DNA of 64,000 nucleotides from Haliotis cracherodii. Taxonomy: Eukaryota. The notes under the pieces were generated by a model. That model did no database searches. It saw only the letters and a list, made by a program, of their open reading frames with translations, and had not been told where the DNA came from. The stretch lies in NCBI RefSeq assembly GCF_022045235.1, contig NW_027266273.1, positions 25,978,001 to 26,042,000 on the forward strand. Reading direction: 5' to 3'. Positions 2,057 to 63,813 of the stretch are shown in pieces. Made by a program: the position numbers and the translations under genes. Position 1 is the stretch's first letter. Each line of letters opens with the position of its first letter.

Positions 2057-2139
2057 GTCAATAGGTTGCTGCCTGGTGTGGGTTTAGACGGGTATGGAAG
2101 AAGAGCGGATGGATACGGGATACTTGGATAGATGAGAAG

Positions 2140-3200: not shown

Positions 3201-3391
3201 GGTGACTGGGTACTCGGGCTGTGGGGAAGAGGATGATAACAAAAATAATCTACCGCCAAATAAATCAACGAAAACACAATGAAAGTACAAACTATAGCAT
3301 AAGGTTTACTTTCTTGTATTCGTTTTAACTGTTTTGCTGATTTCAACAACGCCTGCTGTACTACCTGATCACAATATACTGAATTACTCAC

Positions 3392-37967: not shown

Positions 37968-40900
37968 TTAATTGTCAGGCACATGTATTCTGTCATATAT
38001 CCTGTCAATAGGCCTCCTGTCATACTGTGGCAGCGTGGTGGTGTCATAATTGTTTTCTTCCTGGGGTCCAGATGCTGCGTTAGATGCAGACAGATGGCTG
38101 TACACGGCCGTGCTGTCTGACGGGACAACTTTACCTCCATTGCCCACTGCTCGACACAGAATGTCATATTCACCATCCTGCCTTTCACTCATGCCACTGT
38201 TTCCACCGTCAGCTTCTGTAGGACATACCAGCTGCACATCTGCCAGTTGCGGTTCTTCTACTTTAGCAGGATCCGAGTGCTGTCTGTGATACATAGCACT
38301 CTCAGTTCTCACTGCGTACTTGATTGGTTTCTTGTTGCTGAATACAGAAACAAACCTTCTCTTATAATATACAGAGCTGGGTAGATAGAGAGAATAGGAA
38401 TGACCTGATGGGGTGAGGATTTTGGGTGCATGAGATTTTTCAGATCGATACTCGCTGTTTTTAACATAAGTAATATGTCATTTGATTTGATTAATAAAGA
38501 AATCTCACCGTTTGATGATAAAACAGCCTGAGATTATGACCACAGCAGCAAGAGCCACTATCACACATACCACAGAAGCGATGATTGGAACTGAGAACAC
38601 AAATAAACATGCATGGTTATGTTCATGTGAAACTATTATTAAGCGTCAACCAACGTCTTTATGTAAAACAAGAATATGACTATATGAATAAATTTGCAAC
38701 ACCATATTTACTATTTTATTATTAAGTAATTTCATAGAAATGTAATATAGCATGAAATGTTTGTTCATAATCATTGATTAAATACTGTTGTCAGTAATTC
38801 ACACTACCTAAACTGTGATTACACGATGATAAAGCGCGCAATGTACCATTACACAGTTTTACAGTCATGTGGATTACCTTTTGTGTTTGATCCCAGGGTT
38901 GTGGTTTGAATCTGTGGTGTTGATGTAGTAGATCCTGTGTGAATACAACGTTCAAGTACAACTATATATACTGCCACCCATGTGCGTTACTATAGAAACA
39001 TGAACAAGGTCATGATACATGAAAGAGATTCAAGATTTATGGACATCAACTCTCAAATCTCTAAATAAGAGGTTCCTAGGCTACTTCTTGCGCCTTCATG
39101 AGGGGAAAGTGTGAGTAAGAGATTGGTTTAACGTCGCGTTGAACAGTAGTCCATTTATATCACGGTGTATAAGCTTCATGTCGGACGAAAGCCAGAAGCG
39201 ATGCAGGTCTAAGACCTTCACCATTTCGGTGTAACCCACGAGCGCATGTATGATGCTCACAAACATAGAAACATAATCGAGGCGAAACGAGATTCGAACC
39301 TACGATCATAGGTTTCTGGCGTGCCCAAGGGACGCAACTCTGCAGAGCGAATTGCGGCGCCTTAGACTAGGCCACCCGTGCCCCCACTAGGAGTGTGAAG
39401 GGCAAGAATATACCATCGATAGTTGTGTTTAAAGAATAAAAAAGGGGAAATATCTTTATCGTATGTCTCTATAGCTGTCCACGGCCGTGCAGCAACAAAT
39501 AGGTAGACTTGTACTTGTCAAGGATAAAATAGGTAAATGGTAATCCATGTTTACAAAAATATATTACTGATATATTCTTACATGCCTTGGAATAATTTAG
39601 CATTTACCCGACTGAAATACCGTTTCGCGAACATTGAGGCGTTATTGTGTATATAAATACAAAACACATATCGCTAAGTAATATTTGTTTCTGCCTATCA
39701 ATGTACATTTTACATAAAAGACATAACACCGGTTGGATATGGAGGAACTACAATTGTATACATGATATGTACCTTGCGTGGAAGCATCCGTGGTTTTATT
39801 TCGACAAGGTACGTACCAATCAGAACCTGTCAATGTAAGATACAAATTATGCAGAAAGCGCGAAAATCTGTTTTAAATACACATATCTTATTTCTCATAA
39901 ATAGTACCATAAACTTACATCAGAAGTGTTACCCATTTTACATAAGTAACTAGTCAAGTCGAGCTGTGTAACGTAACGCCAGCCGAAAAACATGTCAAGA
40001 TATCAATGTGTTAACCGTGCCTTTTGTCTCATCTTTCACATTTGACAAGATGCATATATCACTGATCGTGTCCAACCCTCTTAAACATGAGAGTTGATGA
40101 CAAGGTTATCCTCATCATATTTGAGCTTGGAGTATATTTATGCGAACACTTTGAGTCCATGGCAGACTGTTTACACAGAAGGGCACACCAATCGACTCAC
40201 TGCCATACGCCCTTGCCTGTATACTAGTATTTATGATGCCAATAGATACACTCTGGCATAGATACTTACTGGTACTTGTGTTCCATGTGCAGACATAATA
40301 GTTGGAGTCACTACAGTTGGCGACCTGGAATGACTCATTGAAAGCTGTCTGGCAGGTACCTGTTAGGTAAAGAATATTTTTCAGTGGATGTTCCTCCATT
40401 ATATATGTTTATAACAATTGGATGTTTTCAACAATAATTAATCATTGTCAGTTGAATGCCAATCAGTTTCGCGATTCTGTCTGTGTGGCAATCGAAATTG
40501 TAAAACTGTAGCTCATGTCACAAACTTGATGTGAGGGAGAGTAAGGTTCAGTAAAAGTAGTGACGGGTGATCAAGGTTCACAACATTACCATTTTTGTTT
40601 ATCCATATCTTGGTATGTTCAGCCTTAGCCTTCTTCAACACATTGCTGCCGATGGATGTAATTAAATCTTTTAAAGAGAATATCTCGGCGCCCTTGTTGA
40701 TGCAGTCTGTCGCCGCTGCCGACCAATTGAGAGCAGCACAGGAAGATTCAAACGTTAAGTTGTCTGAGGAAAAACAATTATGTAATTAGTTTGACATAAT
40801 TGCAGCTTAAAAAGTAGTTCATTGTTAACAAAATCTTAACAAATATAAACAAAAGTTACAAACAATATTTGTTGTCAATACAATTCTTTATCATGCATTT

Positions 40901-42525: not shown

Positions 42526-44355
42526 CCTTCATACGCGACGCTGTGTAAATACTGACACTCCACATTCACGTGTACCGTACAGATATTGTGACTCAGTTTC
42601 CTGCTTCGTTGCTAATACCAGTTCATGACTGGCTATGACAATAAACATTCCAGCTGATAGGGCAGGCTAGCTTAGAACAAGTGAAGAAAGGTCCCTTAGC
42701 TTAGAAAAGTCCCTTATCTATGAGGAAACAACATGTTCTCTTGTATTTGATAGCAAGCAGATAATTTATTCGAGGTAAATGTTGCAGTGTCAACTGTATA
42801 CATGTGTTCACATAATTTCATAGTATTATTGTTATACTAAACACATCATTAATATGTCAATATTTATGGTTGGATGATGTGTGCATACATTTGTCCGAAA
42901 ACATAAACGGATAATGCATTAATGCAATATTATACAACGCAGCTTAACATTCCGCACCAGTCACCTCAGAGTGAAGTTGTTTACTTTTATCGCTATTTTG
43001 TGTTTACGCCCAATGGCAAGCCATTCTGTTCTGCCTGTCGAGAATAGTTATTCTCTGGCGTTGATTATTTCCTATATATACATGAATGTGTATATGTCAT
43101 GATAAAACAGACTGGAATACGTTGAGGTTTGCTCTTTAAATAAATGAAATAAGAAAAATATCAAAATAATACATGCTAATGTTCACCATGTATTGGTTCT
43201 CAAACATGCCCTGACGCTCTCCTGTCTTGTCGGTTTGTTGGTAACTTGTCATCCATATGTGTCCCTATCAAGTTGCGATCTTTCCCAACTTAGTAACGTG
43301 GATTCATAACTGATTTCATTACAGATCGAGAGATATTTTTAAACCAAAATATCCCCTGCTTAGTGAACAATACTGACTAATGTATGCAGAAGGGTGACAA
43401 GAGTTACCTCCCCCTGGATCAGTAATCGGTGTGTTTATTATTACCATACAAATTGTGTCATATTTCACTGGATAAACTTCACGATTAAATGTTAGTCGAT
43501 CGTCGTTGAAAATACAGAAATGATAATGTCTTCTGGTTAATGTGTAACTCGAAGAGAATGCTAAGGCTCATATCCCACTCGCCATTTCACGGAAGTATCG
43601 TATTGTACCGAGGCACCCGTATACCGGCTTGACTGACCTGGTTCAGGGACAGTTCACTGAAAACGGGAGTGTGTATTGACGCATGAGCATCACCCCAGCT
43701 CTATAACACCGTTAGATGACATGTCACATCGTATGATCGCCACTTATTCCAACACAAATAGTTCAGTTCCCTCAATCAGCTTATAATTAGTGAAGGTCTT
43801 GATCAATTACCAATGTGAAGCCTAACTGACATAGACTATGGGTGGTTTTAGTCAATTAAATTCGAGGTCTAGTTGATAGTACATAAGTCCATAAGGTCGG
43901 TTGTTCGATGCCCTGGCTGAGTCCTACCGGGGGAGTTAAAAGTAGTTGTTATGGTAGCCTGGCGCTCTGCTTTGAGGTAGAAAACAAGGACTGGTCGACT
44001 CGTAATCTGTCGTGGTTGGGCATTCATGATATACTGCAGCATACCATCTCAGTGCAACCACAGACCAATCACCACCGACAGACAGCTGTCTAATCCGTAT
44101 CAAATCAAATTAATACACATTGCATTACTACATACGGAGAACGGAAGTTGTGCCACAGTATGTTTCAATATTTTACCTCTCTAACAAGAACATAAGGCTG
44201 AGGTGGATGAGTTACTTCCCTTAGGCGTGTAAGGATCGTATGGTGGGATATCCATACCCATAAAAACGCGACATAAGATGGTGGGAGTGGACGTGTTTGT
44301 GAATCGCTCTCACTGGAAGTGTTTCCTGGTCGAGATTTCAACCGTACACTGAGCA

Positions 44356-45898
44356 TTGCAAAACATCGACAAGAGAAATACAATCTGTCACAAAATGAGT
44401 GACAAAAAGATAAGAAAAGGACTTCGTCAAAATGACTCTTGTGATTCGAATATAGGGACATTCCTAAGAGTGCCACGTCGATACACAAAGGGAAGCTTAG
44501 TGCGTGAGTCTTTATATACTTTGTTCACACCTAACCCCCTGTACCAGAATATGACGTATACTGTTGAAGGACGATACAAACAATACATTCGTCTGCAGGC
44601 ACAGCAACTTAAACAGGATGCAACAGCATAGATAAGGGTAGAAAAGGACGAAAGTGACATCAAAGTCAACATTGCATATCTGGAACTGAAAGTCAATGCA
44701 ATAGATGAAAGATCGCTTTACTGCACTTAAAGCCAATGCTATCTATATCAGTGATAGTCCTGACGAGTGGGAAAATGACCAGAAAACAATAGAAGCGGAC
44801 GTACAATCCCTCAAACAACAAATGGGTGAATTGAAAAGCATTGACGAAGAAGATTTGGAACTGAGAGAGTCACTTATCGACCAAATAGCTCGCTCTATGA
44901 GAGACACAGTGTTACATTTACAAACATCAAAGAGCTAAGTGGAGTCGACGCGGATGGTGGAACTTGGGAAGAAACTGAAAATGTGCTCAGAAGGTCATTC
45001 AGGATGAACTTTAATTTGAAAGTGATAAAAGGCACTTTAAACGTAAATCGGGAAGAAAAACCAACCACCCCGTCGGGGTGAAGATCCGCGACCCCGCCCT
45101 GGCATCGCCACGTTTATGTTCACCCGTTAGAGGGACGCTGTCACATGTTGTGGGAAAGAGTTAAAAGGGAAACCATTCCATATTGTAGAACAGTTCCTAG
45201 AAGAGATAGTCGCCTGCAGGAGAGACGTCCTGATGCGTCCTGAAGGTCGGAAAGGCTAGGCGTTGGGGGGAAATGTCAACTCGGTTGTTGACAAACTTTT
45301 CATAAATAATGCTCTTCAAACAGCTGATATACCGCCCCCTCTCAGACCGACAACCAAAACGAGGCCATCAAAGGAAAGTACGGGTGGACAAGCGCGGGAA
45401 CAGCATGGTGTTGTAACACGAGATATCTGATTTAGTTAACATGGTCAGTGAGATACAACTACAAGTTTGAGCTACCGACAATAAACCGGATGTGTTTGAA
45501 TGTGCGGGTATTGTAATTGACGCTGTCGGAAGCCCACGTGTTTGTGTTTGGTCAGACCGTGCAAGCATAAGCAGACACAGTGTCCGAAATACAAATGCCT
45601 GCCCGTGGCCGGTAACTTTTCTGTCGGGCTGCCGGAAATTTTCGTCCTCCTGCCCGACTACCTGGCAGATACTTTTAAGACTTACGTATTCAGTTTTATC
45701 ATAACTCCCTGTTGACTCCCAAGTAATTGTTTGCATTATTTCAACTGAATCAAGATGCGATTTGCCCGGTAAAAAAAACCGAAATTTTTCACTAGTTATA
45801 ATATCTGAATGTGCGCAAGTAACTTTGAAGATGGGCAGGCCACATACCTGGGTCACCTGCCTGACTGTGGTACTGGATTTTAATATTTTTTCAAACAC
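44356..45898. pseudogene. Decayed retroelement-like coding remnants (coiled-coil ORF pieces on +, pol-like piece on -)
   Basis: Broken ORFs 44356-44938 (+; heptad-rich, with a stop and a frameshift) and 45368-45898 (-; ITIPAHSN..GLLSVA, loosely like the Gypsy post-protease region). Duplicated at 56616-58152. Identity uncertain. Confidence 0.3.
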
Positions 45899-47411
45899 TG
45901 AGCAGACAACGGAGAGTAGAAGAGTTGTGTATGCTGGATATAATAATGATATTCAGATGACTGCTCAGCAAATTGGAGAGGATATTTTAAGTACTAAGAT
46001 TTATACATTCTGAACTTATCTTCAGTAGTTTGTGAGGGATTAACAACTGACCACAGAGATATGAACACGTGTCACGTTGATATTAGGACTAAGTTATTAT
46101 AATCATGCATCCCTGAAATGAGTGTGTGTGATATGTTATCTCAATTTGATAAAATACGTTTTGCAAGACTGAGTTTTCCGATGCTAATAAGATCCATCTA
46201 CTTATGAAAATTCATGTGAAACATCAACTCATGATAACCCACTGTGCATGCTTAGTTTAGATGTTGGTGGTCTTAGAAGGCGCTCACAGTATCCTGATTT
46301 GCCAGACCATATATGGGTAGTGTGGTCAGGTCAAAAGTTAGTTTTGCTAGTAAATAATTATTGTGCGATATTGATCTTACTTACTCACCCCTGTTGTTAC
46401 CGAGCTGGACGTGTGGCTAGGGGATTATACTATATACCCCCTTTTCTAGTAATTCGTGAATTACCAATCTCACCGGGATTGCATTGTTTTAGGTCAAACA
46501 CCTTTCTATAGTTGTGAGTCAAGTTACTCTTTAGGTGAAGTACGTGTTGAATGTTGTGAGTCTAGATACTCTGTAGGTCCAGTTCCTGTATATTCAAGAA
46601 GTCCAGGATGTCCTTGCTCAGCCCAAACGACTTTAGACTGAGATTTTAATCAAGCATGTTCGTCTGATCTTAATTTTCCAAGAGGCATATTTTAGGGACA
46701 GGCTCTCCGTTACCATTTCACCCTTCCTTACCAAGACGAGATTACTCACTCCTTACTTAACGAGTAGGAGTAGCTGACTCTACCTACAGTGTGTAGCAGC
46801 TCATTAAGTAGTAGGTGAAGCCAGGCAGTCACACTGGTCACACCTAACTGATCTGTGTCATTATTGGGTCGTCTGACAAATGGGATGTCTGACAAGTGAA
46901 CCGATATTTGAGTTAATTTACTCCCAGGTGTTAATTGGATACAGCCGGTTTAATTGGCCGTCTATGCGGCTTTCTGGTCAGAGTGTTTGGTAATAGCTGT
47001 TACACAGTTGCTCAGCTACTCAGCTTGTATAGTTGCTCATGACTTAGATTAATTAGTGATCTTGGTCAGTGTCATTTGGGTCTTGAGCCTTTAGGTTTCA
47101 CTACCTGTTTTCGTGTACACATTTTGAAACTGATCGTCAGCGCTATCCTAAAAAGTACTATTATGTCAACCCTAAATATCATAAACTTCAAAAACTGTTT
47201 CTGCTCCTAAAGTCTCAGTGTTAAGAAACCTCGGCGGATTTGTCTCCTGTGTAGTTAAATGGTGTATAATATCATACGCATACTCATGCGAGTGTCCTCT
47301 GTTAATCAGATGACTTTCTTGCATTTACGTCCTTGTACCACTGTAAGTGGTTAGTTATGGAATAAACTATGTCGATGTCGATGTCGATGTCAATGCCTAT
47401 GTCTCTCTTTA

Positions 47412-47677
47412 GATGGTCCAGTCGTCAAAAGTGCCGCAATTTGCTGTGCAGAGTCGCGCCCCGTGGGAACGCCAGAAACTTATGATTGTGGTTTCGAATC
47501 CCGTTTCGCCCCGATTATGCTTTTAGGTTTGTCAACACCATACCCGTGCTCGTGGGTTTCACCGAAGTGGTAAAGGCCTGAGACCTGCATCACTTCGGGC
47601 TTTCCTCCCACATTAAGCTGCGATATAACTGGAATACTGTTAAAAGCGGCGTTAAACTCAGCTCACTCACTCACTCT
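47412..47677 (+). mobile_element. SINE family 2 copy (duplicate at ~59666-59930)
   Basis: GGTCCAGTCGTC..GTTTCGAATCCC..AAAAGCGGCGTTAAACTCAGCTCACTCACTC. Confidence 0.85.
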
Positions 47678-48563
47678 TTAGATACCTTTAGCTGATAAGA
47701 ATAAGACATTTACCACGTTCTCTATTATTGCTTTATTCTTATAGTGACACCCTGGTCTCAGGAGCACAGCTAAGTGACAATAATTTAGTGAGTAGAAACC
47801 CCAGGCCCATTGTTCACAATATTCTATGTTTGTATAGATGTATTATGAATTAACATGTCGAATACCCACACAAACAGGGTTAAACAAAGCTAACGAATTG
47901 ATTGCGAGAACAACAGTCACGTGTATTTGATAACCTAAACTCAGTCACAGTATTTGAATTAACGTCATTCGGAGCACAGTTTCGTTCCTTCGAACTGGCG
48001 AAAGAAAAACATTTCCCTGTATGACAACATGTTCTAATTAAATAACCTTTGAATCTCCACAGATATCGAACAAAGTTGAACATTAAACTGAAACAGGAAA
48101 TAATGACTAACAGTTTGGCCGGAATACATGACTACTAAATTACGTTTCGTTTTATATTTTAGATAACTCAACAATCAAATATTCATTTATTTTGTGTTAA
48201 TGTTACTTTCATCACTTGTGGAATTTACATGTTCTCATATATAGTCCTCAGTCATAGATACTGAGGACTGAGAAATAATTACAAAACAAATCACAACTAC
48301 TTTAAACTTAATATTTTATTGAATAGCGTTCAGAGCAAGATATTAAAGAAAAAAAAAGGATATGTAAACCTATAGAAACGTATCATGCATGTGTGTACCG
48401 GTGGAAAAGAATGAACACGGCTAGATCAAAGATTATCCGAAGAACAGTAGACACGAACTGTGCAGATCCTGCAATTGCATCCTAAGCTTGTGTGGGTATT
48501 GGCGATGGTCTCTGCAGAATTCATACCTTACAGTTCTGATTAGCAGTTTTAGGATTAGTGTAA

Positions 48564-48834
48564 TTAATCATTCTGTTCCGACTGGTTTGCTGGTGCCCTT
48601 TCGTTGTTTTCAGGTTCATTAAGTGCAGCATAATTGTTCATTTCTGAAGCATCTCGAGCGTGTAGGTGAGAGTAATAATCCACCTCCGGTCGTCCTTCAC
48701 TTGCGACATTCACCTGATTTCCTGATGACCCTATTTTCCTCCTGAAAATATAGTCAGTCCATCAATGGTCAAATGGATTTTCAATTGATGACGACAGACT
48801 AGATAGCGCGTGCGTTTATGTGTTATTGTGTGAG

Positions 48835-48866
<32 letters not shown>

Positions 48867-51800
48867 TGCATGCGTGCGTGCGTGCGTGTGTGTGTGTAAA
48901 TCGAATCTGGACCCGACAATCCAATGATTGATATTATGAGCAAAGGTCGGGGGACGATGAACAACTTTCAACAAACTCACCGAGCCTGACCAACCCAATC
49001 AATTAAGTCGCCTTTTTCAACAGCCACAGGTTGCTGGGTAACCGATCCTAACCTGGAATCCCCCACAGCGTGCTGGGTTAGCTGACTAATATTGTTCATT
49101 GGAGTGTGTCTAAGAGCAGGATATTTCTACCAGTCATCACTGACTTTCATATTAGTGTAATCACTAGTTTGCCCTTTACTCTTAATGGAAACTGTTTCGG
49201 TTGATAGTCTGGACTGATCATTCTCTGGCGTTGGCATTTTGAATTAAACTTTATATTGAATTCGTCTGACAGCGATCTTGCCACAATTGTAACACCCACT
49301 TACTAGGAAGAACAACTTGCACGAATCATCATCTTGTAAACAATACTAGTTACTGTTCCTACCTTTGGATTAAGTTACAGCCAAGAACAATGCTCACAGC
49401 AGCAAGAGCCGCTATCGTACATACGATCGAGGCGATGATTGGAACTGTGAGCAAAAATGAATATATATATCATTAAAGATAGCATGCATCGATTACATCT
49501 CGACGGAAAATATGTTGGTTTTTTTCAGGATCTGATTGGTATGGCAGTAGTTCTGTAAGTCCTCCCAATACAATGAAACTCTTCATTGGAGGCTTTCAAA
49601 TGTTCGATTTACCCTAATCAAGAATGGGAGTTAAGTCTGACGTAAGGCAAATTAAAATGCTGTGAAAACTGTTTTCAATCTACGAGTCCAAAATAAAATC
49701 TTTTCAACAGCATACATCATACATATTGTGCATTCACTCAACATATTCACATAATAAGCGCGGAATACATACGATGTCAAACGTGCAAATGTAAACACGT
49801 AGATTTATGTTTGTTACACCGAGTTGGTCATGCGTGGCATATGTGGTGAGCAACATACCATTTTAACATCCAAATCAATGCATAACTAAATCATGATAAT
49901 ACACACAATGACCAATCATACACCTTTACAGTCATAAATAATACCGTTTGTGTTTGCTCCAGGGCCTTTGGTTAGACTCGGTGGTGTAGATCCTGTGTGT
50001 ATTACAACGTACAAGTAAATATATACTAATATGCTGCCATATGCCCGTCCTGTCACATGTGCGTTTAATTATATTGGCAAAAATAGGGTCTTGACCGTCA
50101 TGAATAGGTTGCAGTACAAGGAGACGCAATGGCTGTGGGTATCAACGTCTGTAATCTCTACCCATGTATCTATGACGTTTCGATGCTACTTCTTGCCCCT
50201 TCTTCGGGTGGTATATATGTACTTGACCAGCAGAAAGTAGGTAATTTGTTATCCATGTTTGAGATGGATAAATTACTGATATATTCTTTCGCGACTTACG
50301 TTATTGAAAATTGTTTCACGAAAATTGAGGCGTAAATGTTCGTACGTCTGTTAATGTATATTTATCAAGACGGAACAAATTATCGCCTATTAATTTTCGT
50401 TACTGCCTATCAATGTAGATGTCACCACGGAGAGTGAGTCACTGAGTGGGATGGGTTTAACGCCGCTTTGAACAATATTCCAGCTGCATCAGGGCGACTC
50501 AGCTTCACGTGGGAGATAAGCACAAGTGACGCAGGTTTCAAAAGTTTACCACTTTGGTGTAACCCACGAGCACGGGGATGGTGCTGACAAACCTAAAAGG
50601 TAATCGTGGCGAACCGGAATTCGAACCCACAATCATTTGCGTCTGGCGTGCTCACGGGACGCAACAGCGAATTACGGCGTCTCAGACAAATGGGCCTACA
50701 GTGGTCCCGTTACGTAGAGGACAACACACAGGTCGATATTCTTGAGTGAGTATGGTTTTACGCCGCTTTTAGCAATATTCCAGCTACATTACGGTGGGGG
50801 ACACCAGAAATGGGCTTCACACGTTGTGCCCATGTCGAGAATCGAACCCGGGTCTTCGAAGAGACGAGCGAACGCTTTAACCACGAGGTTACTCGACCGC
50901 CCCTAGGTCGATATTAACAACTGTATACGTGATTGTAGGACTATTCCCTTGAAGGTTATATGTTCAAGTGAGATTATGACTATATGTCAGTGAATAAATT
51001 TGCTGCTCAATATTTACCATTTTATAAGTAAGTAATTTAAGTACTAAGTAAATAATGTTGAGAGTAATTCACACTACCTAAACTATGATTACACGATGAT
51101 AAAGCGCACAATGTACCATTACACAGTTTTACAGTAATGTGGATTACCTTTTGTGTTTGATCCCTGGGTTGTGGTTTGAATCTGTGGTGTTGATGTTGTA
51201 GATCCTGTGTGGATACAGATACAGATAGGTAGACGTAGACTTGTACTTGTCAAGGATAAAATAGGTAAATGGTAATCCATGTTTACAAAAATATATTACT
51301 GATATATTCTTACATGCCTTGGAATAATTTTAGCATTTACCCGATTGAAATACTGTTTCGCGAACAGTGAGGCGTTAATGTGTATATAAATGCAAAATAC
51401 ATATAGCTAAGTAATATTTGTTTCTGCCTATCAATGTACATTTTACATAAAAGACATAACACCGGATGGATATGGTGGAACTACAATTGTATACATGATA
51501 TGTACCTTGCGTGGAAGCATCCGTGGTTTCATTTCTTAAACATGAGAGTTGATGACAAGGTTATCCTCATCATATTTCAGCTTGGAGTATATTTATGCGA
51601 ACACTTTGAGTCCATGGCAGGCTGTTTACACAGAAGGGCACACTAATCGACTCACTGCCATACGCCCTTGCCTGTGTAGTAGTATTTATGATGTCAATTG
51701 ATACACTCTGGCATCGATACTTACTGGTACTTGTGTTCCATGTGCAGACATAATAGTTGGAGTCACTACAGTTGGCGACCTGGAATGACTCATTGACAGC

Positions 51801-54797
51801 TGTCTGGCAGGTACCTGTTAGGTTAAGAATATTATTCAGTGGATGTTCATCCATTATAATATATGTTTATAACAATTGGATGTTTTCAACAATAATTAAT
51901 CATTGTCAGTTGAATGCCAATCAGTTTCGCGATTCTGTCTGTGGGGCAATCAACATTGTAAAACTGTAGCTCATGTCACAAGCTTGATGTGAGGGAGAGT
52001 AAGGTTCAGTAAAAGTAGTGACGGGTGATCAAGGTTCACAACATTACCATTTATGTTTATCCATATCTTGGTGTGTTCAGCAGTAACATTCTTCAACACA
52101 TTGCTGCCGCGTGATGTTTTTACATCTTCTAAAGAGAATATCGCCGCGCCCTTGTTGATGCAGTCTGTCGCCGCTGCCGACCAATTGAGAGCAGCACAGG
52201 AAGATTCAAACGTGAAGTTGTCTGAGGAAAAACAATTATGTAATTAGTTTGACATAATTGCAGCTTAAAAAGTAGTTCATTGTTAACAAAATCTTAACAA
52301 ATATAAACAAAAGTTACAAACAATATTTGTTGTCAATACAATTCTTTATCATGCATTTGGATATGATTATATACAAAATAATCTTCAACAGAAACTATGC
52401 TAAAAATCTACAAAACCGCTGTTAGAAGTGAAAGAATACACGCTGATCAAGTCACTAAAATAGCGTATTGCAAAACGAACAATCTCGATTTACGAGTGAA
52501 ATGAAAAAATACAGTTTATAAAGAAACATTTTCAAGAGAATGACAAAAATAACAAAAGTTAAATATCACATTTGTGCGGTGAAATATAAAGTGCTATGTT
52601 CACTGCAATGAAAATATCGCTTTACTGAACTTGAGAAAACACAGTCTTTCCCACTGAAGTATATGATAAATATATTACACAAAGATTAGAATATGTGATA
52701 ACAAAATCATATCAAAGGCTTAGTTAGATCAGCAATTCTTTGTGCATGATATATATTTTACAGGTGGTGTACGGTGTAATGTCCAGATGCAATATGCACT
52801 CTAATAACTTTACAATAGGACAATAACTCAATTTTTCTCAACAGATAGTGAAAGTATTACCCTTGTTGTAATTTGGACTTGTCGTCGTGTATTTTGTAGT
52901 CTTTGTTGAAGATCCTGTAATGTGAAATCGATTGTGCCTGTAACTACAATATATCACACATATATATCCAATATATTTGTTTTAATTTGAGGTTTACATG
53001 ATATACGGCTTTTCAATTAGGTGGGAGGTCGGTCACATGACCGCGAAATTGACGTTCATAAGTGTATGGACAAAACCGTGTTTTTGAAATGACGGAAAAA
53101 CTGACGGACTGCTTCCACATTCCCAGGGAAGGCCCTGGGAATTTCCTAGCACGAATACATACAGAAGCATTCTCACTGATCATTTATACCTTTAATCTTG
53201 AACTCGGCGGTTTAGCATACATTAAGAAAGGTCAGATAGCTTGACTGCATGATCGTTCACTGTTAGCCTTGCTATGACCCATGCTAGTGAACAAAACGAA
53301 GAAATGCACATCCAAACTATCGTAGTATGGAACCAATCCTTGACCACGCTGACAGTGACGGTCCACAGCAATCTATGAAGTGAACTCAGTGTATATTTGG
53401 ATCATCTTTAATCGCCCTTCAATGATCGGCCAATTGATCACTGATGACTGAAACATGTAACCGCCACATGTTCATTAAGAACTTCCGAAATCGCTCCCAT
53501 CACGTGTATTGTGTCGGCGTACGACGCGCTGTCATTGTGACTGACTGACTTACTGAGGTAGTTCTTAACAGACCTTTCTTATCTAAAGTTGATATTATTT
53601 GAATACATGTGTTGTGTCAGATGTTTCTGAAGAGCAAGTTATGCATACATACGCTCATGTCACCTTTGTTTTGAGGAACCATTTTATTCTGCGATACAGT
53701 TGGTTGTTGTATGGCTGTCAGTGTAAACATTATGTCACACGTACTTAATAAAATTATGTTTAAATCCAGGCCTAGATCCTTGGAGGTAAACAAAATGTGA
53801 AAACCTTTTATAACAATTGACTTTCATTTAGTATTAACCTTCATTGAATGAGGGCCAAACATCCTTAATTTACTAAAGATATACAGTTTCCTTTAGTCTG
53901 CCACATGTAATGCCGCTAATGACAGAAGCTGCTCCTTTTCACAATTTTGCGCCATATTGACGACCGTCGTCGACGTTTTGACATTTTAAAAATAATAACG
54001 ACAATCACGGGAATAGTGCTGATGGACCAAGGATCATATTCAAAACAATGTAATATCCTATATTGTTTATAAGTAGCAATGGATTCTGATTTGGATAAGG
54101 AATGCAAATCTGCACAGCGAGTTGTGACTCCACTTGGCCCCCAGTACATCGAGCATTTATAGGATGGGATCTTTTTGGTTACGTGAAATACATATTTTAC
54201 CCTCATGATTAGAATATGTTTTGTTAAGTCATACCCATGGCTCAATTAGTTTATTCACAGTTTCAGAGACTCATACACTTTTCATTGCTATTTTGTCGTT
54301 CACGCACAATGGAATCTGTTTCGTCGGATAATCGAGACTGGTTATTCTCTGGCGTTAATGTTTTATATAATTAAGGGTCAACACGCTTTTAAACTAACAT
54401 GAGTAGCCATGCCTATAAATTGTAGAAAATGGCACTTGAATATGCGATAATTATTCTGATATATCGTGTTTGACAGAACAATACATGTATACACACTGTC
54501 AGGCTCAATAATCATTTTCTTAAAACAGAGTGAATTATCGAAATCGAACGTAACTCCAATACAAATAATCCACATCAAATTACAAAATCTAAGTAGGAAA
54601 CCTAATAAATACACCTGCACCCGCACCTCTACAAGTGCTCATTCATACACAAGACGGGACAACCAACAATATGAAAACTGTTTCTCACCTGTGATAGTAT
54701 TGCTGGTAGTGCTGTGTGTGTGGCTCGGGTTCATCAGTATCAATACCATTAACACAAAGCTACCAGGTTTTACAGGGGAGACGAACACAGAAGCCAT
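48564..54797 (-). CDS. Gene D2: type I CTLD receptor with an ITAM-like tail, ~263 aa
   Basis: Exons 54797-54689, 52914-52861, 52221-52048, 51814-51725, 51204-51148, 49992-49945, 49444-49363 (TM VPIIASIVCTIAALAAVSIVLGCNLIQR) and 48741-48564 (RKIGSSGNQVNVASEGRPEVDYYSHLHARDASEMNNYAALNEPENNERAPANQSEQND*). 792 nt in frame; AATAAA on the minus strand at 48315-48320. Confidence 0.85.
48890..49060 (-). mobile_element. SINE-like family 3, degenerate (duplicate at ~61145-61315)
   Basis: Partial match to family 3; adjacent (GT)n/(GCGT)n microsatellite. Confidence 0.6.
50430..50708 (-). mobile_element. SINE family 2, degenerate (duplicate at ~62685-62962)
   Basis: Similarity to the 18800 copy. Confidence 0.75.
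50744..50903 (-). mobile_element. SINE family 1 copy (duplicate at ~62998-63157)
   Basis: Reverse family 1 consensus. Confidence 0.85.
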
Positions 54798-57700
54798 CCT
54801 TCATACGCGACGCTGTGTAAATACTGACACTCCACACTCACGTGTATCGTACAGATATTGTGACTCAGTTTCCTGCTTCGTTGCTAATACCAGTTCATGA
54901 CTGGCTATGACAATAAACATTCCAGCTGATAGGGCAGGCTAGCTTAGAACAAGTGAAGAAAGGTCCCTTAGCTTAGAAAAGTCCCTTATCTATGAGGAAA
55001 CAACATGTTCTCTTGTATTTGATAGCAAGCATATAATTTATTCGAGGTAAATGTTGCAGTGTCAACTGTATACACTTTCATAGTATTATTGTTATACTAA
55101 ACACATCATTAATATGTCAATATTTATGGTTGGATGATGTGTGCATACATTTGTCCGAAAACATAAACGGATAATGCATTAATGCAATATTATACAACGC
55201 AGCTTAACATTCCGCACCAGTCACCTCAGAGTGAAGTTGTTTACTTTTATCGCTATTTTGTGTTTACGCCCAATGGCAAGCCATTCTGTTCTGCCTGTCG
55301 AGAATAGTTATTCTCTGGCGTTGATTATTTCCTATATATACATGAATGTGTATATGTCATGATAAAACAGACTGGATCACGTCGAGGTTTGCTCTTTAAA
55401 TAAATGAAATGAGAAAAAAATCAAAATAATACATGCTAATGTTCACCATGTATTGGTTCTCAAACATGCCCTGACGCCCTCCTGTTTTGTCGGTTTGTTG
55501 GTAACTTGTCATCCATATGTGTCCCTATTAAGTTGCGATCTTTCCCAACTTAGTAACGTGGATTCATAACTGATTTCATTACAGATCGAGAGATATTTTT
55601 AAACCAAAATATCCCCTGCTTAGTGAACAATACTGACTAAGGTATGCAGAAGGGTGACAAGAGTTACCTCCCCCTGGATCAGTAATCGGTGTGTTTATTA
55701 TTACCATACAAGTTGTGTCATATTTCACTGGCTAAACTTCACGATTAAATGTTAGTCGATCGTCGTTGAAAATACAGAAATGATAATGTCTTCTGGTTAA
55801 TGTGTAACTCGAAGAGAATGCTAAGGCTCATATCCCACTCGCCATTTCACGGAAGTATCGTATTGTACCGAGGCACCCGTATACCGGCTTGACTGACCTG
55901 GTTCAGGGACAGTTCACTGAAAACGTGAGTGTGTATTGACGCATGAGCATCACCCCAGCTCTATAACACCGTTAGATGACATGTCACATCGTATGATCGC
56001 CACTTATTCCAACACAAATAGTTCAGTTCCCTCAATCAGCTTATAATTAGTGAAGGTCTTGATCAATTACCAATGTGAAGCCTAACTGACATAGACTATG
56101 GGTGGTTTTAGTCAATTAAATTCGAGGTCTAGTTGATAGTACATAAGTCCATAAGGTCGGTTGTTCGATGCCCTGGCTGAGTCCTACCGGGGGAGTTAAA
56201 AGTAGTTGTTATGGTAGCCTGGCGCTCTGCTTTGAGGTAGAAAACAAGGACTGGTCGACTCGTAATCTGTCGTGGTTGGGCATTCATGATATACTGCAGC
56301 ATACCATCTCAGTGCAACCACAGACCAATCACCACCGACAGACAGCTGTCTAATCCGTATCAAATCAAATTAATACACATTGCATTACTACATACGGAGA
56401 ACGGAAGTTGTGCCACAGTATGTTTCAATATTTTACCTCTCTAACAAGAACATAAGGCTGAGGTGGATGAGTTACTTCCCTTAGGCGTGTAAGGATCGTA
56501 TGGTGGGATATCCATACCCATAAAAACGCGACATAAGATGGTGGGAGTGGACGTGTTTGTGAATCGCTCTCACTGGAAGTGTTTCCTGGTCGAGATTTCA
56601 ACCGTACACTGAGCATTGCAAAACATCGACAAGAGAAATACAATCTGTCACAAAATGAGTGACAAAAAGATAAGAAAAGGACTTCGTCAAAATGACTCTT
56701 GTGATTCGAATATAGGGACATTCCTAAGAGTGCCACGTCGATACACAAAGGGAAGCTTAGTGCGTGAGTCTTTATATACTTTGTTCACACCTAACCCCCT
56801 GTACCAGAATATGACGTATACTGTTGAAGGACGATACAAACAATACATTCGTCTGCAGGCACAGCAACTTAAACAGGATGCAACAGCATAGATAAGGGTA
56901 GAAAAGGACGAAAGTGACATCAAAGTCAACATTGCATATCTGGAACTGAAAGTCAATGCAATAGATGAAAGATCGCTTTACTGCACTTAAAGCCAATGCT
57001 ATCTATATCAGTGATAGTCCTGACGAGTGGGAAAATGACCAGAAAACAATAGAAGCGGACGTACAATCCCTCAAACAACAAATGGGTGAATTGAAAAGCA
57101 TTGACGAAGAAGATTTGGAACTGAGAGAGTCACTTATCGACCAAATAGCTCGCTCTATGAGAGACACAGTGTTACAAACATCAAAGAGCTAAGTGGAGTC
57201 GACGCGGATGGTGGAACTTGGGAAGAAACTGAAAATGTGCTCAGAAGGTCATTCAGGATGAACTTGAATTTGAAAGTGATAAAAGGCACTTTAAACGTAA
57301 ATCGGGAAGAAAAACCAACCACCCCGTCGGGGTGAAGATCCGCGACCCCGCCCTGGCATCGCCACGTTTATGTTCACCCGTTAGAGGGACGCTGTCACAT
57401 GTTGTGGGAAAGAGTTAAAAGGGAAACCATTCCATATTGTAGAACAGTTCCTAGAAGAGATAGTCGCCTGCAGGAGAGACGTCCTGATGCGTCCTGAAGG
57501 TCGGAAAGGCTAGGCGTTGGGGGGAAATGTCAACTCGGTTGTTGACAAACTTTTCATAAATAATGCTCTTCAAACAGCTGATATACCGCCCCCTCTCAGA
57601 CCGACAACCAAAACGAGGCCATCAAAGGAAAGTACGGGTGGACAAGCGCGGGAACAGCATGGTGTCGTAACACGAGATATCTGATTTAGTTAACATGGTC

Positions 57701-60700: not shown

Positions 60701-60817
60701 GTAGACACGAACTGTGCAGATCCTGCAATTGCATCCTGAGCTTGTGTGGGTATTGGCGATGGTCTCTGCAGAATTCATACCTTACAGTTCTGATTAGCAG
60801 TTTTAGGATTAGTGTAA

Positions 60818-61088
60818 TTAATCATTCTGTTCCGACTGGTTTGCTGGTGCCCTTTCGTTGTTTTCAGGTTCATTAAGTGCAGCATAATTGTTCATTTCTG
60901 AAGCATCTCGAGCGTGTAGGTGAGAGTAATAATCCACCTCCGGTCGTCCTTCACTTGCGACATTCACCTGATTTCCTGATGACCCTATTTTCCTCCTGAA
61001 AATATAGTCAGTCCATCAATGGTCAAATGGATTTTCAATTGATGACGACAGACTAGATAGCGCGTGCGTTTATGTGTTATTGTGTGAG

Positions 61089-61120
<32 letters not shown>

Positions 61121-63813
61121 TGCATGCGTGCGTGCGTGCGTGTGTGTGTGTAAATCGAATCTGGACCCGACAATCCAATGATTGATATTATGAGCAAAGG
61201 TCGGGGGACGATGAACAACTTTCAACAAACTCACCGAGCCTGACCAACCCAATCAATTAAGTCGCCTTTTTCAACAGCCACAGGTTGCTGGGTAACCGAT
61301 CCTAACCTGGAATCCCCCACAGCGTGCTGGGTTAGCTGACTAATATTGTTCATTGGAGTGTGTCTAAGAGCAGGATATTTCTACCAGTCATCACTGACTT
61401 TCATATTAGTGTAATCACTAGTTTGCCCTTTACTCTTAATGGAAACTGTTTCGGTTGATAGTCTGGACTGATCATTCTCTGGCGTTGGCATTTTGAATTA
61501 AACTTTATATTGAATTCGTCTGACAGCGATCTTGCCACAATTGTAACACCCACTTACTAGGAAGAACAACTTGCACGAATCATCATCTTGTAAACAATAC
61601 TAGTTACTGTTCCTACCTTTGGATTAAGTTACAGCCAAGAACAATGCTCACAGCAGCAAGAGCCGCTATCGTACATACGATCGAGGCGATGATTGGAACT
61701 GTGAGCAAAAATGAATATATATATCATTAAAGATAGCATGCATCGATTACATCTCGACGGAAAATATGTTGGTTTTTTTCAGGATCTGATTGGTATGGCA
61801 GTAGTTCTGTAAGTCCTCCCAATACAATGAAACTCTTCATTGGAGGCTTTCAAATGTTCGATTTACCCTAATCAAGAATGGGAGTTAAGTCTGACGTAAG
61901 GCAAATTAAAATGCTGTGAAAACTGTTTTCAATCTACGAGTCCAAAATAAAATCTTTTCAACAGCATACATCATACATATTGTGCATTCACTCAACATAT
62001 TCACATAATAAGCGCGGAATACATACGATGTCAAACGTGCAAATGTAAACACGTAGATTTATGTTTGTTACACCGAGTTGGTCATGCGTGGCATATGTGG
62101 TGAGCAACATACCATTTTAACATCCAAATCAATGCATAACTAAATCATGATAATACACACAATGACCAATCATACACCTTTACAGTCATAAATAATACCG
62201 TTTGTGTTTGCTCCAGGGCCTTTGGTTAGACTCGGTGGTGTAGATCCTGTGTGTATTACAACGTACAAGTACATATATACTAATATGCTGCCATATGCCC
62301 GTCCTGTCACATGTGCGTTTAATTATATTGGCAAAAATAGGGTCTTGACCGTCATGAATAGGTTGCAGTACAAGGAGACGCAATGGCTGTGGGTATCAAC
62401 GTCTGTAATCTCTACCCATGTATCTATGACGTTTCGATGCTACTTCTTACCCCTTCTTCGGGTGGTATATATGTACTTGACCAGCAGAAAGTAGGTAATT
62501 TGTTATCCATGTTTGAGATTGATAAATTACTGATATATTCTTTCGCGACTTACGTTATTGAAAATTGTTTCACGAAAATTGAGGCGTAAATGTTCGTACG
62601 TCTGTTAATGTATATTTATCAAGACGGAACAAATTATCGCCTATTAATTTTCGTTACTGCCTATCAATGTAGATGTCACCACGGAGAGTGAGTCACTGAG
62701 TGGGATGGGTTTAACGCCGCTTTGAACAATATTCCAGCTGCATCAGGGCGACTCAGCTTCACGTGGGAGATAAGCACAAGTGACGCAGGTTTCAAAAGTT
62801 TACCACTTTGGTGTAACCCACGAGCACGGGGATGGTGCTGACAAACCTAAAAGGTAATCGTGGCGAACCGGAATTCGAACCCACAATCATTTGCGTCTGG
62901 CGTGCTCACGGGACGCAACAGCGAATTACGGCGTCTCAGACAAATGGGCCTACAGTGGTCCCGTTACGTAGAGGACAACACACAGGTCGATATTCTTGAG
63001 TGAGTATGGTTTTACGCCGCTTTTAGCAATATTCCAGCTACATTACGGTGGGGGACACCAGAAATGGGCTTCACACGTTGTGCCCATGTCGAGAATCGAA
63101 CCCGGGTCTTCGAAGAGACGAGCGAACGCTTTAACCACGAGGTTACTCGACCGCCCCTAGGTCGATATTAACAACTGTATACGTGATTGTAGGACTATTC
63201 CCTTGAAGGTTATATGTTCAAGTGAGATTATGACTATATGTCAGTGAATAAATTTGCTGCTCAATATTTACCATTTTATAAGTAAGTAATTTAAGTACTA
63301 AGTAAATAATGTTGTCAGTAATTCACACTACCTAAACTATGATTACACGATGATAAAGCGCACAATGTACCATTACACAGTTTTACAGTAATGTGGATTA
63401 CCTTTTGTGTTTGATCCCTGGGTTGTGGTTTGAATCTGTGGTGTTGATGTTGTAGATCCTGTGTGGATACAGATACAGATAGGTAGACGTAGACTTGTAC
63501 TTGTCAAGGATAAAATAGGTAAATGGTAATCCATGTTTACAAAAATATATTACTGATATATTCTTACATGCCTTGGAATAATTTTAGCATTTACCCGATT
63601 GAAATACTGTTTCGCGAACAGTGAGGCGTTAATGTGTATATAAATACAAAATACATATAGCTAAGTAATATTTGTTTCTGCCTATCAATGTACATTTTAC
63701 ATAAAAGACATAACACCGGATGGATATGGTGGAACTACAATTGTATACATGATATGTACCTTGCGTGGAAGCATCCGTGGTTTCATTTCGACAAGGTACG
63801 TACCAATCAGAAC
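60818..63813 (-). CDS. Gene D3: third CTLD receptor copy, 3' part (ITAM-like tail; 5' exons beyond the right edge)
   Basis: Exons 63813-63760 (SDWYVPCRNETT.., intact), 63458-63402, 62246-62199, 61698-61617 (TM) and 60995-60818 (tail as in D2). Confidence 0.82.

What the first reader, a model, noticed from the sequence alone, without database searches (positions are those of the whole stretch)
48621..48674. ITAM-like motif in the D2/D3 tail, broken in D1
Seen: EVDYYSHL-HARDASEMNN-YAAL is YxxL-x10-YxxL with upstream acidic residues (also at 60875-60928). The homologous D1 segment is AVYSHL-x14-YDTT, with the second half lost, plus separate GEYDIL and RIYDRI motifs that are ITIM-like but not canonical. 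This exon's reading frame is absent from the ORF track. Established: the ITAM consensus YxxL/I-x6-12-YxxL/I binds tandem-SH2 Syk-family kinases.
Basis: partly seen in the sequence, partly recalled or inferred. Interest (0 to 1): 0.75.

Follow-up and report, generated by a model that had tools for sequence, protein, structure and literature searches.

The report
Abalone lectin-like receptor, ITAM-like tail
The motif sits in the real, spliced cytoplasmic tail of two near-identical abalone genes for a small lectin-like surface receptor, and it looks like the two-tyrosine signalling motif of immune receptors, but the most distant relative found lacks its first tyrosine, so its function is plausible rather than shown.

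Summary
On the minus strand, 48621-48674 and 60875-60928 both encode YSHL-HARDASEMNN-YAAL. The two copies lie in a 99.3% identical duplication, so they count as one observation.

The motif is in the last coding exon of a type I membrane protein: signal peptide, short C-type-lectin-like domain, Ser/Thr-rich stalk, TM helix, 58-residue tail. A spliced contig from a public run and an NCBI Haliotis cracherodii protein model both use this acceptor and frame. All relatives found are annotated abalone (Haliotis) "uncharacterized proteins".

The motif fits the extended ITAM consensus (spacer 6-12) but not the canonical spacer of 6-8. It arises in only 0.1% of shuffles of the tail. The genome encodes a Src-family kinase and a tandem-SH2 kinase of the Shark type (SH2-ankyrin-SH2-kinase).

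- **Against a strict ITAM:** only 3 of 4 known short tails keep both YxxL. H. rubra reads YFSHL-x10-YATL.
- **D1's "broken" copy:** D1's long tail does align with this segment. However, 0 of 7 long tails have L/I at the second site, so the short tail probably gained its second YxxL rather than D1 losing it.

Verdict: a new member of a known kind, since oyster ITAM/hemITAM receptors that signal through Syk are already described. Interest is moderate.

The parts
48621..48674 (-). ITAM-like motif YSHL-HARDASEMNN-YAAL in the tail of copy D2
60875..60928 (-). The same motif in copy D3, with identical protein sequence
48564..48741 (-). D2 last coding exon. The first base completes an Arg codon, then come 58 codons and stop TAA at 48566-48564. 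The acceptor AG is at 48743-48742.
   Evidence: spliced contig (X8 record 24); P0005 model
48742..49362 (-). Intron between the D2 TM exon and tail exon (GT..AG). It holds a (GT)n/(GCGT)n microsatellite.
49363..49446 (-). D2 transmembrane exon (PIIASIVCTIAALAAVSIVLGCNLIQ). It enters in phase 1 and ends with two bases of the Arg codon. No charged residue lies in the helix.
51149..51205 (-). D2 stalk exon S2 (GSTTSTPQIQTTTQGSNTK)
51723..51814 (-). D2 lectin-like domain exon B (TCQTAVNESFQVANCSDSNYYVCTWNTST)
   Evidence: X2 record 22 joins it to exon A
52047..52222 (-). D2 lectin-like domain exon A (DNFTFESSCAALNWSAAATDCINKGAAIFSLED...KIWININ)
   Evidence: (Lectin_C E 0.016, below cut-off)
54687..54797 (-). 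D2 exon 1 (MASVFVSPVKPGSFVLMVLILMNPSHTHSTTSNTITG), start codon and probable signal peptide
60818..60995 (-). D3 last coding exon. The tblastn hit shows the same residues as NCBI protein P0005 from RRK to the end.
61617..61700 (-). D3 transmembrane exon
37968..38339 (-). D1 last coding exon: a 123-residue long tail with GEYDIL, AVYSHL-x14-YDTT and RIYDRI, stop TAA at 37970-37968
   Evidence: 93% identical to H. rufescens P0007
38037..38105 (-). D1 segment VYSHL-x14-YDTT that aligns with the D2/D3 motif
38508..38592 (-). D1 transmembrane exon (PIIASVVCVIVALAAVVIISGCFIIK); boundaries are by analogy with D2

Best explanation
The motif lies in the terminal coding exon of two near-identical tandem abalone genes, D2 and D3. 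They encode a small type I membrane receptor: signal peptide, short C-type-lectin-like ectodomain, Ser/Thr-rich stalk, uncharged TM helix, 58-residue cytoplasmic tail.

The tail's two YxxL boxes (Y[SC][HQ]L, ten residues, YA[AT]L) most likely act as phosphotyrosine docking sites. On receptor clustering a Src-family kinase would phosphorylate them. They would then recruit an SH2 kinase of the Syk family, here a Shark-type SH2-ankyrin-SH2-kinase, giving a self-contained ITAM-like activating tail.

The short tail is a derived form of the family's longer four-tyrosine tail, which is the D1 type.

Shown: the sequence, the splice, the frame, the membrane topology signals, the family alignment, and the presence of the two kinases in the genome. 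Inferred: phosphorylation, bidentate SH2 binding, and an activating output.
For: - Motif, frame and topology.
- The splice phases fit. Exon B ends with 1 base of a codon, the TM exon starts with 2 and ends with 2, and the tail exon starts with 1.
- Spliced contigs: X8 record 24 joins the TM exon to the tail; X2 record 22 joins exon A to exon B.
- P0005 matches D3 at 87-100% in every exon hit; exon 1, stalk exon S2 and the TM exon are 100% and the tail residues are identical.
- The arrangement is non-random for the tail's composition: 203 of 200,000 shuffles.
- Both YxxL and the x10 spacing are kept in 3 of 4 short tails. The distal box sits in the best-conserved block, ASE[MT]NNYA[AT]L, in 4 of 4.
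- Eight differences in other abalones' contigs (6 replacements, 2 silent) all miss the four key Y and L residues.
- YSHL is shared with the long tails of three other species and with one of three long-tail paralogues in this genome, L023.
- A Src-family kinase lies at C34:16.86-16.89 Mb. An SH2-Ank-Ank-SH2-TyrK gene lies at C67:27.873-27.895 Mb.
- Precedents read as passages: oyster CgIgR ITAM binding CgSyk (PMC6994640); Draper ITAM YxxI/L-x6-12-YxxI/L binding Shark's tandem SH2 (PMC6219719); oyster CgCLec-TM1 and CgCLec-HTM hemITAM with Syk (PMC13027682).
Against: - H. rubra P0002, the only short tail that is far diverged (49% tail identity), has Phe where the first phosphotyrosine should be (HYFSHL). 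The bidentate motif is therefore not conserved across the genus.
- The other three short tails come from two closely related species and are 88-100% identical. Their agreement has little weight: with 8 differences over about 175 bases, missing 12 key bases by chance is expected more than half the time.
- The x10 spacer is outside the canonical 6-8 (recalled).
- There is no acidic residue at -3 of either Tyr.
- No homologous tail was found outside Haliotis: 2 hits at E<=0.001 in 1.84 billion representatives, one of them spurious.
- Both boxes also fit the YxxPhi endocytic signal.
- No expression data for immune cells and no biochemical data exist here.
- Runs X1, X2 and X8 are only guessed to be RNA.
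Confidence: 0.4

Rival explanations
1. Single-tyrosine (hemITAM-like or other SH2) docking. Only the distal YA[AT]L box is the functional phosphosite. The proximal Y[YF]SHL box has another role, and the ITAM look in three of the tails is incidental.
For: YA[AT]L and its flank ASE[MT]NNY are kept in 4 of 4 short tails, while the proximal Tyr is Phe in H. rubra. Oyster transmembrane lectins signal to Syk through a hemITAM (PMC13027682 passages).
Against: The acidic cluster that precedes the hemITAM tyrosine in Dectin-1 and CLEC-2 (recalled) is absent; there is one Glu, at -4. The proximal YSHL is the older and more widely shared motif, present in the long tails of three other species and in one of three long-tail paralogues here, which argues that it is functional too.
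Confidence: 0.2
2. Tyrosine-based sorting signals. YSHL and YAAL are YxxPhi motifs read by clathrin adaptor mu subunits, making the protein an endocytic or recycling lectin-like receptor without kinase signalling.
For: Both boxes, and D1's YDIL, YSHL and YDRI, fit YxxPhi. Many membrane C-type lectins are endocytic receptors (recalled). Phe at the proximal site in H. rubra would remove only one of several redundant signals.
Against: The constant x10 spacing in 4 of 4 short tails and the conserved polar flank are not needed for adaptor binding. The family's other conserved tyrosines (NHYD, AMYH) are not YxxPhi, which suggests selection on tyrosines as such.
Confidence: 0.2
3. No specific function. 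The motif is a chance arrangement in a fast-evolving, low-complexity tail of a lineage-restricted gene. D2 may even be a decaying copy.
For: The regex hits 32 places in the window's six frames. The tail changes fast, with 6 replacement against 2 silent differences between close species. D2 carries a 276-bp deletion that removes the 5' part of a stalk exon.
Against: The shuffle frequency is 0.1%. The spacing and distal box are conserved to H. rubra. The YSHL box is shared across tail types in four species, and in this genome with long-tail paralogue L023, whose match to D1's tail is 35% identical. The gene is transcribed and correctly spliced.
Confidence: 0.15

Closest known systems
Crassostrea gigas CgIgR (ITAM receptor that recruits CgSyk; PMC6994640, passages read)
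   Same: A mollusc type I membrane receptor whose own cytoplasmic tail carries YxxL-spacer-YxxL and signals without a separate adaptor. The paper applies the same extended consensus, D/ExxYxxL/I-x6-12-YxxL/I.
   Different: CgIgR has five Ig domains rather than a lectin-like domain, a shorter spacer, and an acidic residue in the D/ExxY register. Its Syk binding was shown experimentally; nothing is shown for the abalone protein. No sequence relationship was detected.
Crassostrea gigas CgCLec-TM1 and CgCLec-HTM (transmembrane C-type lectins with hemITAM, Syk-associated; review PMC13027682, passages read)
   Same: Mollusc transmembrane lectin-domain receptors with a YxxL-based tail coupled to a Syk-family kinase.
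   Different: They carry a single YxxL (hemITAM) and a full carbohydrate-recognition domain that binds LPS and bacteria. The abalone domain is short, lacks the long-loop region, and does not reach Pfam's Lectin_C cut-off. I did not read the primary papers.
Drosophila Draper ITAM with Shark kinase (PMC6219719, passages read)
   Same: An invertebrate receptor tail with YxxI/L-x6-12-YxxI/L, phosphorylated by a Src-family kinase and read by the tandem SH2 domains of Shark. The abalone genome encodes a kinase with the same domain order.
   Different: Draper is an EGF-repeat engulfment receptor with many further tyrosines and an NPxY motif. There is no sequence relationship.
Vertebrate paired lectin-like NK receptors (for example NKR-P1; best PDB profile hit 5tzn_A, NKR-P1B, E 0.15)
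   Same: Tandem gene clusters in which near-identical lectin-like ectodomains are joined to different cytoplasmic tails.
   Different: The vertebrate receptors are type II proteins. Their activating members use a charged TM residue and an ITAM adaptor, and their inhibitory members carry ITIMs (recalled). Here both forms are type I, have uncharged TM helices, and D1's tyrosines do not fit ITIM.

Membership tests
ITAM (immunoreceptor tyrosine-based activation motif) | Two YxxL/I boxes in one cytoplasmic tail | tested here: met
   YSHL and YAAL at 48621-48674 and 60875-60928. The tail follows a TM exon and QRRK.
ITAM (immunoreceptor tyrosine-based activation motif) | Spacer of 6-8 residues (canonical, recalled) or 6-12 (extended; PMC6994640 and PMC6219719 passages) | tested here: inconclusive
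   The spacer is 10, inside 6-12 and outside 6-8. It is constant in 4 of 4 short tails.
ITAM (immunoreceptor tyrosine-based activation motif) | Acidic residue three positions before the tyrosine (D/E-x-x-Y) | tested here: not met
   Position -3 is Val (first Tyr) and Met (second Tyr). Acidic residues sit at -2/-4 and at -4/-7.
ITAM (immunoreceptor tyrosine-based activation motif) | Both tyrosines conserved in orthologs | tested here: not met
   3 of 4 short tails keep both. H. rubra P0002 reads YFSHL-x10-YATL.
ITAM (immunoreceptor tyrosine-based activation motif) | Phosphorylation by a Src-family kinase and bidentate binding to the tandem SH2 domains of a Syk-family kinase | not testable with these tools
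   Only the presence of candidate kinases could be checked: a Src-family gene and an SH2-Ank-Ank-SH2-TyrK gene.
hemITAM | A single YxxL preceded by a cluster of acidic residues (recalled from Dectin-1 and CLEC-2) | tested here: not met
   The distal YA[AT]L is conserved in 4 of 4, but it is preceded by SE[MT]NN, with one Glu only.
ITIM (for D1's GEYDIL, AVYSHL, RIYDRI) | [S/I/V/L]-x-Y-x-x-[I/V/L] (recalled) | tested here: not met
   Position -2 is G, A and R respectively.
C-type lectin-like domain (Pfam PF00059) | Match above Pfam's curated cut-off | tested here: not met
   Exon A alone scores 16.4 bits against a cut-off of 22.6, E 0.016, and is 1 of 8 exon pieces to match. Among full proteins, 4 of 8 match at E<=1, best 0.007.
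C-type lectin-like domain (Pfam PF00059) | CTLD fold | tested here: inconclusive
   The AlphaFold model has mean pLDDT 38, so no fold search was run. The best PDB profile hit is NKR-P1B at E 0.15, in two blocks. The nearest Atlas clusters are Lectin_C at 0.86, a lead only.
Syk/Shark family kinase (locus G000:C67:27.873-27.895 Mb) | Two SH2 domains upstream of a tyrosine kinase domain in one gene, with ankyrin repeats between the SH2 domains in Shark (recalled) | tested here: met
   Pfam hits on one strand, in order: SH2 (E 1.1e-9), Ank (6.9e-8), Ank (4.2e-6), SH2 (2e-4, 21.8 bits against 21), then four kinase pieces. The kinase subfamily was not resolved by the PDB search. No transcript was seen.

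The most novel reading that the evidence does not exclude
Abalones may have independently built a paired-receptor system. One lectin-like ectodomain is coupled, through tandem gene copies, either to an older four-tyrosine long tail or to a derived short tail. The short tail would have been made by an internal deletion and a change of YDTT to YAAL, creating a self-contained ITAM read by a Shark-type kinase. That would show the birth of an ITAM from a pre-existing tyrosine tail within one genus.
Probability: 0.15. Interest if true: 0.7.

Novelty: new member of a known kind. Interest (0 to 1): 0.4.

Why it matters
If the tail signals as proposed, abalones have a lineage-restricted lectin-like receptor that couples directly to a Syk/Shark-type kinase. 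That would add a gastropod case to the oyster ITAM and hemITAM receptors.

The short and long tails sit side by side in one cluster and can be aligned. This gives a rare chance to see how an ITAM-like motif arises from another tyrosine tail.

The test is simple: phosphopeptide binding to the tandem SH2 domains, with Y-to-F mutants. The H. rubra Tyr-to-Phe variant already offers a natural comparison.

If the tail does not signal this way, the finding is an ordinary annotated gene with a look-alike motif.

Tried and rejected
- **Pairwise BLASTP of the D2 and D1 tails:** no alignment at E<=100. A two-sequence DNA alignment was uninformative. Homology appeared only in the eight-protein alignment.
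- **Signal-peptide exon:** I first proposed MFLYKLYFFISL at about 52529. I rejected it because the donor phase does not fit exon A. The real exon 1 was found through P0002 and P0005.
- **Structure prediction:** prediction from the eight-protein alignment gave pLDDT 38. I ran no fold search and did not use the second job.
- **Syk-type candidate at C34:** the locus at C34:16.86-16.89 Mb turned out to be a single-SH2 Src-family kinase.
- **Kinase subfamily:** the PDB search with one kinase exon of the C67 gene gave EGFR, TYK2 and JAK-type chains first, so the subfamily is unresolved.
- **Other SH2-plus-kinase loci:** I fetched 14 stretches around six such loci. My two recalled SH2 patterns found two SH2 cores only at C67. 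The patterns are crude, so a canonical Syk elsewhere is not excluded.
- **Spurious hit:** P0001 (E 2.5e-9, eight stretches) is a repeat protein that matches SHLH-like repeats. I rejected it as spurious.
- **Short-tail search:** the word-index search restricted to the tail found 3 proteins among 3 candidates.
- **Literature:** the 'Haliotis' + 'ITAM' search returned 26 papers, 12 of them listed. The two I opened matched only the surname Itami. The rest were not opened, so I claim only that I found no paper on this motif.
- **Not requested:** no supplementary files.

Full report
**What is at the coordinates.** The motif is on the minus strand. Translating 48746-48540 gives FRRKIGSSGNQVNVASEGRPEVDYYSHLHARDASEMNNYAALNEPENNERAPANQSEQND, then a stop. 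A regex scan of all six frames places YSHL-x10-YAAL at 48621-48674 and at 60875-60928. The two copies lie in a 9,649-base duplication that is 99.3% identical, 41887-51535 against 54159-63789. The two tail exons encode the same 58 residues, so they are one observation, not two. The frame is missing from the ORF list because the exon has no start codon.

**Gene structure.** The tail exon is preceded by tattttcag. Upstream lies a TM exon, 49363-49446, encoding PIIASIVCTIAALAAVSIVLGCNLIQ and flanked by cacag and gtagg.
- The phases fit. The TM exon ends with two bases, AG, and the tail exon begins with G. The result reads ...NLIQ-R-RKIGSS..., a hydrophobic helix followed by a basic stop-transfer stretch.
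- Further upstream are two exons of a short Cys-rich domain, 52047-52222 and 51723-51814. Through homology with database proteins I also found a stalk exon, an optional Ser/Thr-rich exon, and exon 1 with the start codon at 54797.
Each exon was searched by itself, and the full-length proteins used are database entries.

**Transcript evidence.** I laid contigs of 4 of the 24 listed runs on 48150-53650.
- Record 24 of X8 (506 letters) covers 48337-48740 and continues directly at 49362-49446. That is the predicted TM-to-tail splice; the one-base ambiguity is the shared G.
- Record 22 of X2 joins 52045-52136 to 51723-51803, which is exon A to exon B.
- Run X19, with the same organism code as X8, has contigs that run through the splice sites into the introns, which is the genomic form.
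- These runs are only guessed to be RNA, and contigs cannot show expression level or strand.
- The contigs differ from the window by about 5%. In the tail exon there are eight differences, six replacements (I3T, S24C, H27Q, D30E, A39T, A51V) and two silent. None touches the four key residues. With so few differences this has little statistical weight.

**Who has it.** phmmer of the 58-residue tail against 1.84 billion representatives gave 2 hits at E<=0.001. One is a spurious repeat protein. The other is P0002, a 242-residue protein.
- A word-index search with P0002 gave 8 proteins among 641 candidates. All are Haliotis and all are named 'uncharacterized protein'.
- P0005 (H. cracherodii) matches copy D3, including the exons just beyond the window end, at 87-100% in every exon hit; exon 1, stalk exon S2 and the TM exon are 100% and the tail residues are identical. 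Its record's longest contig has the same length as the window's contig. The gene is therefore already annotated with exactly this tail.
- Short tails: P0005, P0004 and P0006 (H. rufescens), and P0002 (H. rubra).
- Long tails of the D1 type: P0007 (H. rufescens), P0003 (H. rubra), P0008 (H. asinina) and the truncated P0009.

**Conservation of the motif.** The short tails read:
- H. cracherodii: DYYSHL-HARDASEMNN-YAAL
- H. rufescens: DYYCHL-QARDASEMNN-YATL
- H. rufescens, second gene: DYYCQL-QARDASEMNN-YATL
- H. rubra: HYFSHL-EAGNASETNN-YATL

The x10 spacing and the distal box are kept in 4 of 4. The ITAM pattern is kept in 3 of 4. H. rubra has Phe exactly where the first phosphotyrosine would be. 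It is the only short tail that is far diverged (49% identity), so it is the only real test of conservation, and the strict motif fails it. The three that pass are 88-100% identical.

**Relation to D1.** BLASTP sees no similarity between the two tails. The eight-protein alignment, however, lines up YSHL with YSHL and E-x-N-N-Y with E-E-N-[NHQ]-Y. It places the short tail's first Tyr against the Tyr of GEYDIL, with about 20 residues missing in between.
- The long tail has five matches in this genome, all within 26.01-26.35 Mb of the same contig.
- The three full paralogues read YDTL...YGHS...HYDTT...IYDRT, YDKL...YSHL...HYDIT...EYDKV, and YDSL...YSHM...HYDRA...LYERV.
- Counting D1, P0003, P0007, P0008 and these three, 0 of 7 long tails have L or I at +3 of the tyrosine that aligns with YAAL.
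- The simplest reading is that the four-tyrosine long tail is the older state, and that the short tail gained its second YxxL. D1 did not lose it. This is an inference from distribution, without a rooted tree.
- D1's motifs do not fit ITIM, because G, A and R stand at -2.

**Is it more than chance?** The bare pattern occurs 32 times in 127,996 six-frame codons of the window, so by itself it is weak. Given the tail's own composition it occurs in 203 of 200,000 shuffles, and the 6-8 version in 97.

**Can the cell read it?** I searched the genome for SH2 and tyrosine-kinase exons: 47 SH2 matches, and 145 kinase matches with 139 of 820 candidates scored.
- One co-located pair, at C34:16.86-16.89 Mb, is a single-SH2 Src-family kinase.
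- At C67:27.873-27.895 Mb, on one strand and in order, lie an SH2 core, two ankyrin-repeat exons, a second SH2 core and four kinase exons. The Pfam values are SH2 E 1.1e-9, Ank 6.9e-8 and 4.2e-6, and second SH2 2e-4, just over the cut-off.
- That order is the hallmark of Shark, the invertebrate Syk-family kinase (recalled). Passages of PMC6219719 state that Shark binds Draper's ITAM (YxxI/L-x6-12-YxxI/L) through its tandem SH2 domains after Src42a phosphorylation.
- A canonical Syk was neither found nor excluded.

**The ectodomain.** Support for a C-type-lectin-like domain is consistent but weak.
- Lectin_C scores E 0.016 on exon A, below the cut-off.
- 4 of 8 family proteins match at E<=1, best 0.007.
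- The best PDB profile hit is the NK receptor NKR-P1B, E 0.15, in two blocks that cover the first helix and the last Cys-Cys region.
- The nearest Atlas clusters are Lectin_C at 0.86, which that tool calls a lead only.
- The AlphaFold model was poor, pLDDT 38.
- The domain is about 90 residues and appears to lack the long-loop region. Sugar binding of the classical kind should not be assumed.

**Comparison with what is known.** Mollusc receptors with ITAM or hemITAM tails that work through Syk are in print.
- Oyster CgIgR has a 'classical ITAM' that interacts with CgSyk (PMC6994640, passages).
- The oyster transmembrane lectins CgCLec-TM1 and CgCLec-HTM have a hemITAM (review PMC13027682, passages; primary papers not read).
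- The abalone protein is unrelated in sequence, is restricted to Haliotis as far as these searches reach, and combines a lectin-like domain with a full two-box motif.
- My one search for 'Haliotis' with 'ITAM' listed nothing relevant among the papers I opened.
I did not test it.

**Verdict.**
- I put 0.4 on an ITAM-like, kinase-recruiting tail. I put 0.2 each on a single-site docking motif and on sorting signals, and 0.15 on no specific function.
- It is a new member of a known kind, of moderate interest. The most attractive angle is the side-by-side long and short tails, which may show how such a motif arises.

Noticed in passing
window 51535 (junction); compare 63790-64065 just past the window end and 39803-40078: Copy D2 has a 276-bp deletion relative to D3 and D1. 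It removes the acceptor and 5' part of stalk exon S1 (SDWYVPCRNETTDASTQ). The exon is 51 bases, phase 1 to 1, so skipping it would keep the frame. Whether D2 is functional is unknown.
   Followed up: partly
L005 (G000:C10:26042001-26052000), about 2.2-6.6 kb past the window end: Upstream of D3's lectin exons there are three tandem copies, about 2.1 kb apart, of the segment that holds exon 1. Only the outermost is 100% identical to P0005.
   Followed up: no
window 50358-50909 (also 62612-63163): A short interspersed repeat in the D2 and D3 intron has summed contig depths of 10^4-10^6 in all four runs, with many loose ends at 50743. It is very abundant in the laid contigs of all four runs.
   Followed up: no
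G000:C67:27873000-27895000, minus strand (L008-L010): A gene with the order SH2, two ankyrin repeats, SH2, tyrosine kinase, that is, a Shark-type Syk-family kinase. The activation-loop region reads ESDYYKA.
   Followed up: partly
G000:C10:26058943-26347899 (L022-L025): Four further copies of the long tyrosine tail lie within 330 kb downstream on the same contig, at 31-90% identity. Three keep the four-tyrosine layout and one is truncated like P0009. This points to a larger local receptor cluster.
   Followed up: partly
proteins P0002 and P0003 (H. rubra LOC124257045, isoforms X7 and X2): The short-tail and long-tail forms are annotated as isoforms of one gene. However, they already differ from lectin exon B onward. 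They may be two tandem genes merged by the annotation rather than alternative tail cassettes.
   Followed up: no
window 1-3200 and 25781-27170: Long, G-rich minisatellite arrays appear as many staggered self-matches at 80-86% identity, with strong GC skew in 1-4000.
   Followed up: no
window 5518-5691, minus strand: A weak match (29% identity, E 0.009) of the lectin-like exon A of P0002 suggests another, more distant member of the family near the start of the window.
   Followed up: no
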